A stretch of DNA of 63,803 nucleotides, counting the filler, from Octopus bimaculoides (Eukaryota): assembly GCF_001194135.2 (NCBI RefSeq). It is 9 parts of 9 records of this genome, joined end to end, with 100 filler letters (N's around TTAATTAATTAA, not from the genome) between each part and the next. Parts side by side here need not be neighbours in the genome. Positions count along the whole stretch, not along the records: positions 22,526 to 31,922 come from NC_069005.1; 8 more parts are not named here. One strand, written 5' to 3'. A program made the translations under genes and the position numbers. Position 1 is the stretch's first letter, and each line of letters begins with the position of its first letter. This document shows, one piece after another, positions 31,577 through 31,922 of this stretch. Under the pieces are notes generated by a model. That model worked only from the letters and a program-made list of their open reading frames with translations, was not told where the DNA came from and did no database searches.

Positions 31577-31922
31577 AGATGGCCCTGCTCAGTATGTAGA
31601 AAAGGAGTAGGTAGTAACTCTATAAGATGTACCCGGTGCAAGCTATGGACACATAAGAGGTGCAGCAACATCAAAGGCAGGTTAACTAGCAAGTTAGTTT
31701 TTGTTTGTGGCAGATGTTCAGGTGCAATAAAGACTGCAAACAAACAGGAAACAACTTCTATCTCATTCCAGGGTGAAAAACTAGAGGTAGTCGATAGCTT
31801 CCGCTATCTGGGCGACCAAGTTAGTAGTGGGGGTGGGTGCGCTGAAAGTGTAGCTGCTAGAATAAGAATAGCCTGGGCAAAGTTTAGAGAGCTCTTACCC
31901 CTGCTGGCGACAAAGGGACTCT
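31577..31922 (+). mobile_element. 5'-truncated RTE LINE fragment with an intact PHD finger inside the RT
   Basis: [46 protein letters not shown]...EKLEVVDSFRYLGDQVSSGGGCAESVAARIRIAWAKFRELLPLL; open frame up to the gap. Confidence 0.92.

What the first reader, a model, noticed from the sequence alone, without database searches (positions are those of the whole stretch)
31586..31717. PHD finger inserted inside the reverse transcriptase of an RTE LINE family
Seen: C-x2-C-x10-C-x2-C-x4-H-x2-C-x14-C-x2-C (CSVC...CTRC..WTHKRC...CGRC) in an open frame. The same finger is at 63253-63122 (CSIC/CTQC/H/C/CGRC) and eroded at about 21410-21530. In the 63-kb and 21-kb copies it lies after YxDD and GLxVNxxKT and before FRYLG, i.e. 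between RT motifs 6 and 7. The other RTE in this window (14058-15007) has about 32 residues in that interval against about 92 here, an insertion of about 60 aa. Established: C4HC3 is the PHD signature, PHD fingers often read histone H3 tails, PHDs are known in ORF1 of CR1/L2-type LINEs, and chromodomains guide chromovirus integration. Inference: a chromatin-reader module built into the RT could steer target-primed insertion to particular chromatin. I recall similar Cys-rich RTE sequences in other invertebrates but do not know whether this domain has been functionally described.
Basis: partly seen in the sequence, partly recalled or inferred. Interest (0 to 1): 0.8.

Follow-up and report, generated by a model that had tools for sequence, protein, structure and literature searches.

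The report
PHD finger inside an RTE reverse transcriptase
This octopus-like DNA holds a broken copy of a jumping gene (an RTE-type LINE) whose reverse transcriptase has a conserved PHD zinc finger built into its catalytic core, a widespread and selectively maintained feature that I could not find described in the searchable papers and whose function is untested.

Summary
Window 31586-31717 (+) encodes an exact C4HC3 finger. It scores above Pfam's PHD cut-off, and its predicted fold best matches the TAF3 PHD finger.

The local copy is only a dead fragment. It starts at 31577 against a (TATG/TA)n microsatellite and is cut at 31922 by the piece edge.

The family is real and large:
- Full-length relatives of about 1000-1120 aa carry an AP endonuclease, the reverse transcriptase (RT) and the finger.
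- All 77 full-length representatives keep the eight zinc ligands.
- The finger sits on a 62-66 aa insert between RT motif 6 and motif 7 (the primer grip). PHD-less RTE relatives lack the insert.
- The PHD-bearing elements form one clade (91/100 bootstrap).
- dN/dS in the finger is 0.02-0.08 in four pairs and 0.37 in a fifth.

The chromatin-reader idea is plausible but unproven. The nearest solved relatives are all H3K4-methyl readers (Pygopus, TAF3, BPTF), and both TAF3 cage tryptophan positions are kept. Against it, two other cage residues and the H3R2-binding acidic residues are missing, and the finger is always net basic. Nucleic-acid binding near the primer is a serious rival.

No paper in the searchable library describes the feature. 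Automatic annotation already flags it.

The parts
31577..31921 (+). 5'-truncated fragment of a PHD-bearing RTE-type LINE ORF: finger, linker, RT motif 7 and the start of the thumb. The frame is open and is cut at 31922 by the piece edge.
   Evidence: tblastn of 31 relatives all hit only 31547-31921. Identity is 72-96% to Octopus bimaculoides proteins. There is no stop in 114 codons.
31580..31717 (+). PHD finger core (W1 to C46). Zinc ligands are C31586, C31595, C31628, C31637, H31652, C31661, C31706 and C31715. Candidate cage aromatics are W at 31580 and W at 31646.
   Evidence: Pfam PF00628 at 26.6 bits against GA 24. AF2 pLDDT is 87-94 over the finger. Foldseek top hits are TAF3, BPTF, ARID5 and ING PHDs.
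31718..31777 (+). Variable C-terminal linker of the insert (residues 47-66 of the fragment).
   Evidence: Low column conservation with indels. pLDDT drops to 64 in the fragment model and to 53 for the matching residues 791-800 of the P0097 model.
31778..31816 (+). RT motif 7 (motif E, the primer-grip hairpin): KLEVVDSFRYLGD.
   Evidence: V71, F74, Y76, L77, G78 and D79 are invariant or nearly so in 85 sequences. They align with FxYLG of PHD-less RTEs. Strands E66-69, E73-76 and E79-82 appear in the model.
31838..31921 (+). Start of the thumb: the first long helix, with the conserved AWxKFRELxPLL motif.
   Evidence: Helix 87-110 in the AF2 model. R94, W99, K101 and L109 are conserved.
31387..31577 (.). 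(ATGT/TATA)n microsatellite at the 5' boundary of the fragment. The apparent upstream extension of the ORF (from 31403) is repeat translation, not LINE sequence.
   Evidence: Tandem Repeats Finder. No homology upstream of about 31547-31577.

Best explanation
Shown: 31577-31921 is a dead, 5'-truncated insertion of an RTE-type LINE (a non-LTR retrotransposon) in an octopus-like genome. It belongs to an old, monophyletic lineage of RTE elements with a single ORF of AP endonuclease plus reverse transcriptase (RT). In this lineage a canonical C4HC3 PHD finger on two linkers, about 62-66 aa in all, was inserted once into the RT palm, between motif 6 (GLxVNxxKTK) and the motif 7 primer-grip hairpin (FxYLG). 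It has been kept intact ever since under purifying selection, so the finger is needed for the element's propagation.

Inferred mechanism (my best guess, untested): the finger is a tethered peptide-binding reader next to the site where the RT holds the primer. In target-primed reverse transcription the primer is the nicked chromosomal DNA. The finger would use the canonical PHD groove (the nearly invariant GVGxNSI strand) plus a two-aromatic half-cage (Y/W/F at position 1, W at position 23) to bind a methyl-lysine-bearing tail on the target chromatin, most likely methylated H3K4. This would stabilise or bias the enzyme on such chromatin while cDNA synthesis starts. Its specificity probably differs from TAF3 or BPTF, because two cage residues and the H3R2 contacts are changed.
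For: Identity and anatomy:
- Pfam PHD above cut-off in the window copy and in 20 of 20 diverse family members.
- AF2 fragment model with pLDDT 86.5 and the typical two-strand PHD core.
- Foldseek top hits are all PHD fingers, best TAF3-H3K4me3 at rmsd 2.0 A and 32% identity.
- Full-length relatives are Exo_endo_phos plus RVT_1 plus PHD. The P0097 model has pLDDT 90.1 and pTM 0.82 and matches full-length human LINE-1 ORF2p at E = 3e-36.
- C4HC3 is intact in 77 of 77 full-length PHD-bearing representatives. YADD to FxYLG is 122-133 aa against 61-68 aa in PHD-less RTEs.
- The PHD-bearing elements form one clade in 91 of 100 NJ bootstraps on 921 non-insert columns. The sister group is PHD-less RTEs of Necator and Capsicum.
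- The family is large: 8472 proteins at E<=1e-3. Named hosts are Octopus, the hagfish Myxine and the crab Petrolisthes.

Selection: Nei-Gojobori dN/dS of the finger core is 0.018-0.082 in four pairs and 0.37 in one, against 0.07-0.12 for the rest of the ORF.

Reader hypothesis:
- A family-profile search of PDB sequences ranks Pygopus 1/2 first (E = 2e-7), then TAF3, PHF2, Alfin-like, BPTF and Set3. The PDB titles show TAF3, BPTF and Set3 bound to H3K4me2/3. That the rest are H3K4me2/3 readers is from my own knowledge.
- Position 1 (Y41/W22/F9 of 85) and W23 (83 of 85) align with TAF3 W868 and W891, which are cage residues (PMC12238850). I15 aligns with TAF3 I883, the H3T3 contact.
- The most conserved non-ligand surface, G9-V10-G11-x-N13-S14-I15, is the canonical peptide-binding strand.
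- The finger is folded (pLDDT 85-92) but its linkers are of lower confidence (73 and 53), consistent with a mobile, outward-reaching module.
- It directly precedes the primer grip that anchors the primer in LINE RTs (PMC10830420).
Against: - TAF3 cage residues D877 and M882 correspond to nearly invariant G9 and S14. The H3R2-binding positions (D889, E905) are variable here.
- The finger core is net positive in all 77 members (+1 to +9, mean +5.2). The window copy has 11 K/R and no D/E, whereas TAF3 is -6. That is unfavourable for binding the basic H3 tail.
- W23 is also a common structural residue of PHD fingers, so its conservation is weak evidence.
- No binding, zinc or insertion-site data exist.
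- The hosts of most full-length ORFs are unknown (metagenome contigs).
Confidence: 0.45

Rival explanations
1. Nucleic-acid clamp. The basic zinc module next to the primer grip binds the target-DNA primer strand or duplex, or the template RNA 3' end, and helps initiate target-primed reverse transcription. It would supply a function that other LINE clades obtain from C-terminal Cys-rich or zinc-knuckle domains, which RTE elements lack. The conserved aromatics would stack on bases rather than cage a methyl-lysine.
For: The finger is net basic in every member (mean +5.2; window copy +11 with no acidic residue), in contrast to the acidic TAF3 PHD. Basic positions K/R8, K26 and R/K27 are conserved. 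The insertion point is immediately N-terminal to the primer-grip hairpin that holds the primer. No other zinc-binding domain is detected in the full-length ORFs. The acidic H3R2 contacts and two cage residues are lost.
Against: Nucleic-acid binding by a single canonical PHD finger is rare (my own knowledge). The closest solved relatives are all histone-tail readers. The most conserved surface is the peptide-binding strand rich in Gly, Asn and Ser, not a basic patch. PHD-less sister RTEs manage without any such module.
Confidence: 0.25
2. Protein-partner or in-cis docking module. The finger binds a non-histone peptide by strand addition, much as Pygopus PHD also binds BCL9. The partner could be a host factor (nuclear import, replication or repair machinery, or evasion of silencing) or another part of the element's own protein or a second subunit. 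In this reading it does not select target chromatin.
For: The best profile match is to Pygopus PHDs (E = 2e-7), which use a second surface for BCL9 (my own knowledge). The conserved groove and aromatics fit generic peptide binding. The non-canonical cage and the lack of H3R2 contacts argue against standard H3K4me3 reading.
Against: No candidate partner is known. Conservation from molluscs to crustaceans and hagfish requires an equally conserved partner, which histones satisfy best. The low-confidence linkers argue against a rigid in-cis structural role.
Confidence: 0.15
3. Passive passenger. The finger is a tolerated structural insertion in a surface loop of the RT, with no specific ligand, retained only because removing it would destabilise the fold.
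For: It lies in a loop that is short and variable in PHD-less RTEs, a place where insertions may be tolerated.
Against: Purifying selection on the core is as strong as or stronger than on the enzyme in four of five pairs. Non-ligand surface residues (aromatic 1, G9, V10, G11, N13, S14, I15, K26, R27, S29, G30) are conserved across members that share only about 42% identity in the insert. There is no loss in 77 full-length lineages.
Confidence: 0.05

Closest known systems
RTE-clade non-LTR retrotransposons without the finger (nematode RTE-like elements of Necator americanus and plant RTE-like elements found here; RTE-1 and BovB by general knowledge)
   Same: A single long ORF with an N-terminal AP endonuclease and RT. 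The C-terminal tail carries the RLRW(F/Y)GHV motif in the PHD-bearing sequences read. There is no RNase H or C-terminal zinc knuckle. The 3'UTR is very short and ends in short tandem repeats. These elements are the sister group in the RT tree.
   Different: They have only about 10 residues between motif 6 and the motif 7 hairpin. The family here has a 62-66 aa insert carrying a PHD finger.
PHD domains in ORF1 (or the extreme N-terminus of ORF2) of CR1 and L2 LINEs (Kapitonov and Jurka 2003; Metcalfe and Casane 2014, PMC4120745)
   Same: A LINE that has captured a PHD finger. The role proposed in that literature is chromatin-related.
   Different: There the PHD is a terminal module of the accessory ORF1 protein or lies upstream of the endonuclease. 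Here it is embedded in the catalytic palm of the RT, in a different LINE group (RTE) whose ORF1 is rudimentary or absent.
H3K4me2/3-reading PHD fingers: Pygopus 1/2, TAF3, BPTF, PHF13, ING
   Same: C4HC3 cross-brace fold. These are the best sequence and profile matches. The 'YPCGxC ... ILC ... C.KW.H..C.G' signature is shared with Pygopus. Aromatics are kept at both TAF3 cage Trp positions, and Ile at the H3T3 contact.
   Different: TAF3 D877 and M882 are replaced by Gly and Ser. There are no conserved acidic residues for H3R2. The net charge is strongly positive rather than negative. Binding is untested.
Chromatin-reader modules captured by LTR retrotransposons: the chromovirus integrase chromodomain, and the methyl-CpG-binding domain in arthropod Copia elements (PMC6673714)
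   Same: The concept is the same: a mobile element carrying a host-type chromatin-reader domain fused to its integration machinery, which can bias target choice.
   Different: A different element class and enzyme (integrase against target-primed RT) and a different reader fold. In those elements the domain is a C-terminal appendage whose function has been shown. Here it is an internal insertion whose function is unknown.
Lineage-specific insertions and accessory nucleic-acid-binding domains of other RTs (the LINE-1 ORF2p wrist and CTD in PMC10830420; R2 zinc-finger domains and the telomerase IFD from my own knowledge)
   Same: Extra modules that extend the RT core and contact template or target. 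The predicted full-length fold matches LINE-1 ORF2p.
   Different: None of these is a PHD finger. In my reading, none sits between motifs 6 and 7.

Membership tests
PHD finger (Pfam PF00628) | Cys4-His-Cys3 ligand pattern with canonical spacing | tested here: met
   C-x2-C-x10-C-x2-C-x4-H-x2-C-x14-C-x2-C at 31586-31717. The ligands are conserved in 77 of 77 full-length relatives.
PHD finger (Pfam PF00628) | Profile score above the curated gathering threshold | tested here: met
   26.6 bits against 24. 20 of 20 diverse members hit PHD at E<=0.01, best 3e-8.
PHD finger (Pfam PF00628) | Interleaved (cross-brace) zinc fold with a small two-stranded sheet | tested here: met
   Prediction only. The AF2 model has pLDDT 87-94 over the finger with strands 14-16 and 23-25. 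All top Foldseek PDB hits are PHD fingers, best TAF3 at rmsd 2.0 A.
PHD finger (Pfam PF00628) | Binds two zinc ions | not testable with these tools
   Needs metal analysis of purified protein.
H3K4me3-reader subclass of PHD fingers (TAF3/BPTF/ING type) | Aromatic cage for the methyl-ammonium group | tested here: inconclusive
   Two of the four TAF3 cage positions are kept (W868 to Y/W/F at position 1; W891 to W23). The other two are changed (D877 to G9; M882 to S14).
H3K4me3-reader subclass of PHD fingers (TAF3/BPTF/ING type) | Acidic residues that bind H3R2 and the H3 N-terminus; overall acidic surface | tested here: not met
   Positions aligned with TAF3 D889 and E905 are variable. Net charge is +1 to +9 in all 77 members, against -6 for TAF3.
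H3K4me3-reader subclass of PHD fingers (TAF3/BPTF/ING type) | Measured binding to H3K4me peptides or nucleosomes | not testable with these tools
   Needs peptide arrays, ITC or NMR.
RTE group of non-LTR retrotransposons | Single ORF with N-terminal AP endonuclease followed by RT, and no RNase H or C-terminal CCHC domain | tested here: met
   Met in full-length relatives: Exo_endo_phos plus RVT_1 (plus PHD) only, with a fold match to LINE-1 ORF2p EN plus RT. The window copy itself is only a 114-codon fragment.
RTE group of non-LTR retrotransposons | RT phylogeny places it with reference RTE elements | tested here: inconclusive
   The nearest PHD-less relatives are nematode (Necator) and plant elements, which I take to be RTE-type on general knowledge rather than by a test here. 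No curated Repbase or Dfam reference sequences (RTE, RTEX, Proto2) were available, so the sub-clade is not assigned.
RTE group of non-LTR retrotransposons | Very short 3'UTR ending in short simple repeats | tested here: met
   Where the tail is readable in the seven full-length contigs, about 20-45 nt follow the stop and end in GGAAAAGTAA(AGTAA)n-like repeats. Where the contig runs on, the flanks then differ. The 3' end of the window copy is cut off.
CR1/L2-type LINE PHD (ORF1 type III) | PHD located in ORF1 or upstream of the endonuclease | tested here: not met
   Here the PHD lies about 55 aa after YADD, inside the RT.

The most novel reading that the evidence does not exclude
The PHD-bearing RTE lineage would be the first LINE whose reverse transcriptase carries its own histone-mark reader. 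The finger, tethered beside the primer grip, would bind a methylated H3 tail (or another chromatin tail) on the nucleosome next to the nick. It would thereby direct or license target-primed reverse transcription at particular chromatin, a built-in targeting device conserved from molluscs and crustaceans to jawless vertebrates.
Probability: 0.3. Interest if true: 0.8.

Novelty: new variant of a known kind. Interest (0 to 1): 0.6.

Why it matters
LINE target choice is usually ascribed to the endonuclease and to DNA- or RNA-binding appendages. Chromatin readers are known in LTR elements (chromodomain, MBD) and in the accessory ORF1 of CR1/L2 LINEs, but not inside a LINE polymerase.

A folded reader-type domain, maintained by selection in the palm of the RT next to the primer grip in a clade with thousands of members, raises two questions. 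One is whether target-primed reverse transcription can be coupled directly to chromatin state. The other is how much insertion the RT core tolerates.

It would also matter for two practical areas. [quoted passage not shown] The second is engineering retrotransposon-based insertion tools.

If the finger instead binds nucleic acid, it would be an unusual use of the PHD fold and a new solution to primer or template handling in the compact RTE enzyme.

Tried and rejected
- **Upstream RT in the piece:** I looked for the rest of the RT of this copy. tblastn with 31 fragments and 15 full-length proteins found only 31547-31921, plus a weak unrelated tail remnant on the minus strand at 29122-29367. The local copy is therefore a fragment.
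- **Upstream ORF extension:** the apparent extension to 31403 is microsatellite translation.
- **Rfam and tRNA scans of the piece:** only sub-threshold miRNA-like hits on microsatellites, which are artefacts, and no tRNA.
- **Host identification for full-length ORFs:** cluster look-ups returned no organism names. The contigs come from marine and other metagenomes. Only three named hosts were recovered from fragments.
- **Literature:** ten full-text searches combined PHD with RTE, RTEX, Proto2, Rex3, non-LTR, ORF2 and AlphaFold. None found a paper describing a PHD inside an RTE RT. Kapitonov and Jurka 2003 is not held. Repbase and Dfam could not be consulted.
- **Octopus RTE-2_OV:** I tried to check whether this element (PMC9115989, reported with a 'C2H2 Znf' after the RT) is the same family. 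Its sequence is not in the held supplements.
- **Non-PHD zinc fold:** the readings 'non-PHD zinc ribbon, C1 or RING' are rejected. C1, RING and MYND hits are all below cut-off and weaker than PHD, and the structural neighbours are PHDs only.
- **Position of the finger relative to the primer:** I could not measure it, because model coordinates are not exposed.
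Full report
**What is in the window**

The piece (22526-31922) is AT-rich, gap-ridden, microsatellite-laden animal DNA. In frame + from 31580 to the piece edge there are 114 codons without a stop: [114 protein letters not shown].

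A relaxed form of this pattern in a stop-free frame occurs once in the six-frame translation of the piece and in none of 300 shuffles. Pfam's PHD model scores 26.6 bits (E = 6e-6), above its gathering score of 24. C1, MYND, ZZ and RING-like models are weaker and below their cut-offs.

**The local copy is a fragment**

Homology to relatives begins at about 31577, directly after a 190-bp (ATGT/TATA)n microsatellite at 31387-31577, and ends at the N-run at 31922. The ORF that seems to start at 31403 is repeat translation. No other part of this element is present in the piece.

This is therefore a dead insertion, either 5'-truncated or interrupted by the microsatellite. Its best protein matches are Octopus bimaculoides predicted proteins at 72-96% identity, so the host is an octopus or a close relative.

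**What the family looks like**

- **Size.** A profile of the region found 8472 proteins at E<=1e-3 and 298 at E<=1e-30 among 1.84 billion representatives.
- **Architecture.** Full-length members of 973-1126 aa are single ORFs with an N-terminal Exo_endo_phos (AP endonuclease), RVT_1, the PHD finger, and then a helical thumb and a tail with RLRW(F/Y)GHV. Pfam hits nothing else above threshold.
- **Predicted fold.** An AlphaFold2 model of one member (P0097, 1004 aa) is confident (pLDDT 90.1, pTM 0.82). Its best structural matches are full-length human LINE-1 ORF2p complexes (E = 3e-36), then R2 proteins.
- **3' ends.** Seven full-length contigs from Tara Oceans and other metagenomes were read. 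Where the tail is readable, the 3'UTR is about 20-45 nt and ends in GGAAAAGTAA(AGTAA)n-like short repeats. Where the contig runs on past that, the flanks then differ, as expected for genomic insertions.

Endonuclease plus RT in one ORF, no RNase H or CCHC domain, a minimal 3'UTR with a simple-repeat tail, and nematode and plant RTE-like elements as nearest PHD-less relatives all fit the RTE group. The exact sub-clade (RTE, RTEX or Proto2) could not be assigned without curated references.

**Where the finger sits**

In an alignment of 94 long proteins, the 77 PHD-bearing sequences read ...YADD...(W)K..(L/M)E.KGL(R/K)VN..KTK.m.sg - about 10 aa - (Y/W/F)PC..C..GVG.NSI.C..C..W.H(K)(R/K)CSG...(F/Y).C..C - about 15-25 aa - .(L/I)E.V..F.YLGD. 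The 17 PHD-less relatives go from KTK/KTE to the strand before F.YLG in about 10 residues.

YADD to F.YLG is 122-133 aa with the finger, and 61-68 aa in the 14 PHD-less sequences where both motifs were found. The insert is thus 62-66 aa and lies between RT motif 6 (D) and motif 7 (E). Motif 7 is the primer grip, the hairpin that anchors the primer 3' end in LINE, R2 and group II RTs, with the thumb following it (PMC10830420). The comparison now rests on many elements rather than on the second copy outside this piece.

**Is it kept by selection?**

- All 77 full-length PHD-bearing representatives keep the eight zinc ligands. One has H-x4-C instead of H-x2-C. These sequences are distinct at the 90% level and mostly share only 37-60% identity.
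- A neighbour-joining tree on 921 columns that exclude the insert makes the PHD-bearing sequences one clade (91 of 100 bootstraps). PHD-less elements of Necator and Capsicum are its sister group. That points to one old acquisition with no losses among the sampled intact elements.
- Mean pairwise identity is 42% in the insert against 46% elsewhere.
- For seven elements whose DNA I could fetch, Nei-Gojobori dN/dS of the 45-codon finger core is 0.018, 0.059, 0.050 and 0.082 in four pairs with unsaturated dS. The rest of the ORF gives 0.09-0.12. A fifth pair gives 0.37 against 0.07.

**Is it a PHD in fold?**

The 114-aa window fragment, modelled with an 85-sequence alignment, gives pLDDT 86.5 (87-94 over the finger), with the short two-stranded sheet and helical turns typical of PHD fingers. 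The motif 7 strands and a long thumb helix follow.

Foldseek against the PDB returns only PHD fingers at the top:
- TAF3 PHD bound to H3K4me3 (5xmy and 5wxh: rmsd 2.0-2.1 A over 47 columns, 32% identity, probability 1.00)
- BPTF, ARID5, BHC80, Set3, ING4/5/1, MOZ/MORF and others

E-values are modest (0.015 and above), as expected for a 47-residue domain. The 'non-PHD zinc ribbon' refutation also fails.

**What does it bind? Evidence for a histone or peptide reader**

- A family-profile search of all PDB sequences ranks Pygopus 1/2 PHDs first (E = 2e-7 to 1e-6). The printed alignment shows a shared signature: g(V)YPCg.C ... ILC. C.KW.H..C.G.
- TAF3, PHF2, Alfin-like 3, BPTF, Set3, KDM5B, PHF13 and PHF23 follow. 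The PDB titles show TAF3, BPTF and Set3 bound to H3K4me2/3. That the others read methylated or unmodified H3K4 is from my own knowledge.
- In the pairwise alignment to TAF3, window W1 and W23 fall on the two tryptophans that correspond to W868 and W891. [quoted passage not shown] I15 falls on I883, which contacts H3T3 (PMC12238850).
- Across 85 family sequences, position 1 is Y41/W22/F9/H6/D4, position 23 is W in 83, and position 15 is I74/V9.
- The best conserved non-ligand stretch, G9-V10-G11-x-N13-S14-I15, is the strand and loop against which histone tails pair in known complexes.

**What does it bind? Evidence against a standard H3K4me3 reader**

- TAF3 D877 and M882 correspond to nearly invariant Gly9 and Ser14.
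- The positions of the H3R2-binding D889 and E905 are variable.
- The finger core is net positive in all 77 full-length members (+1 to +9, mean +5.2). The window copy has 11 K/R and no D/E, whereas the TAF3 finger is -6.
- Conserved basic residues sit at positions 8, 26 and 27.

A basic finger tethered next to the primer grip could equally hold the target-DNA primer or the template. RTE enzymes lack the Cys-rich C-terminal domains that other LINEs use for nucleic-acid contacts.

In the full-length model the finger itself is confident (pLDDT 85-92 for residues 741-790). Its linkers are less so (73 for 731-740, 53 for 791-800), which suggests a folded module on flexible tethers. I could not read coordinates, so its distance to the primer path is not measured.

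**Verdict on mechanism**

Shown:
- It is a canonical PHD finger.
- It was inserted once between RT motifs 6 and 7 of an RTE lineage.
- It is conserved under purifying selection.
- It is widespread. Named hosts are Octopus bimaculoides, the hagfish Myxine glutinosa and the crab Petrolisthes cinctipes, alongside many unnamed eukaryotic contigs.

Inferred: it binds a ligand through the canonical groove and a two-aromatic half-cage. I rate a chromatin-tail reader acting during target-primed reverse transcription as most likely (about 0.45). A nucleic-acid clamp comes next (about 0.25), then a non-histone or in-cis peptide partner (about 0.15). A functionless passenger is unlikely (about 0.05).

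**Comparison with what is known**

PHD fingers are documented in ORF1, or upstream of the endonuclease, of CR1 and L2 LINEs (Kapitonov and Jurka 2003, cited; Metcalfe and Casane 2014, PMC4120745). Reader domains fused to integration machinery are known in LTR elements: the chromodomain (general knowledge) and a captured MBD (PMC6673714).

None of ten full-text searches found a description of a PHD within the RT of an RTE element. Automatic annotation does see it. UniProt names octopus fragments 'Zinc finger PHD-type domain-containing protein' with RVT_1 plus PHD, and many database entries carry PF00628 or PHD_Pygo.

The octopus brain LINE paper describes RTE-2_OV as a 1109-aa ORF with EN, RT and a 'C2H2' zinc finger (PMC9115989).

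I therefore class the finding as a new variant of a known kind: a captured reader-type domain in a LINE, but embedded in the polymerase core. The caveat is that Repbase and Dfam curators may have noted it.

**Limits**

- The tree is neighbour-joining with a simple distance correction.
- dN/dS uses few pairs and short regions.
- Structures are predictions.
- The hosts of most full-length ORFs are unknown.
- The window copy itself contributes only a fragment.

Noticed in passing
window 30740-30850, minus strand: A tRNA-derived SINE-like sequence with a B-box-like GGTTTCGATTCC (...GGCAGTGGACTCACGGTCGTAGGATCGCGGTTTCGATTCCCAGACC...). ARAGORN calls no tRNA there. It is probably a cephalopod SINE copy.
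   Followed up: partly
window 29122-29367 (ORF 29285-29506), minus strand: A weak remnant of a LINE/RTE C-terminal tail. tblastn gives E = 0.005-0.02 to residues about 919-1008 of full-length family members. It is a separate, degenerate insertion.
   Followed up: partly
window 25958-26307 and 31400-31580: Rfam hits to mir-297, mir-466, mir-3149 and similar families, all far below their gathering scores and lying on (TATG/TA)n microsatellites. These are repeat artefacts, not miRNA genes.
   Followed up: yes
window 26526-27450: Extreme strand asymmetry (GC skew -0.81) and long low-complexity ORFs rich in Asp/Glu, His, Ile or Ser, interrupted by an N gap. This is simple-sequence DNA, not genes.
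   Followed up: no
loci L003-L009 (3' ends): Full-length PHD-bearing elements from marine metagenomes have 3'UTRs of only about 20-45 nt where the tail is readable, ending in GGAAAAGTAA(AGTAA)n-like repeats. Where the contig runs on, the flanks then diverge. L007 and L008 also carry a short upstream ORF (122 and 105 aa) that could be a rudimentary ORF1.
   Followed up: partly
literature, PMC9115989 (Octopus vulgaris RTE-2_OV): The brain-expressed octopus RTE is reported with a 'C2H2 zinc finger' after the RT in a 1109-aa ORF. The size matches the PHD-bearing clade, so that finger may really be this PHD. The sequence was not in the held supplements.
   Followed up: partly
proteins P0371 and P0385 (clusters of 146 and 206 members, contigs over 1 Mb): One sub-family of the PHD-bearing RTE (GEYPCAVCRTGVGNNSIYCNGCKLWVHKKCSGL...) is very abundant in large eukaryotic contigs of unnamed ENA assemblies, which indicates massive amplification in some unidentified animal genome.
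   Followed up: no
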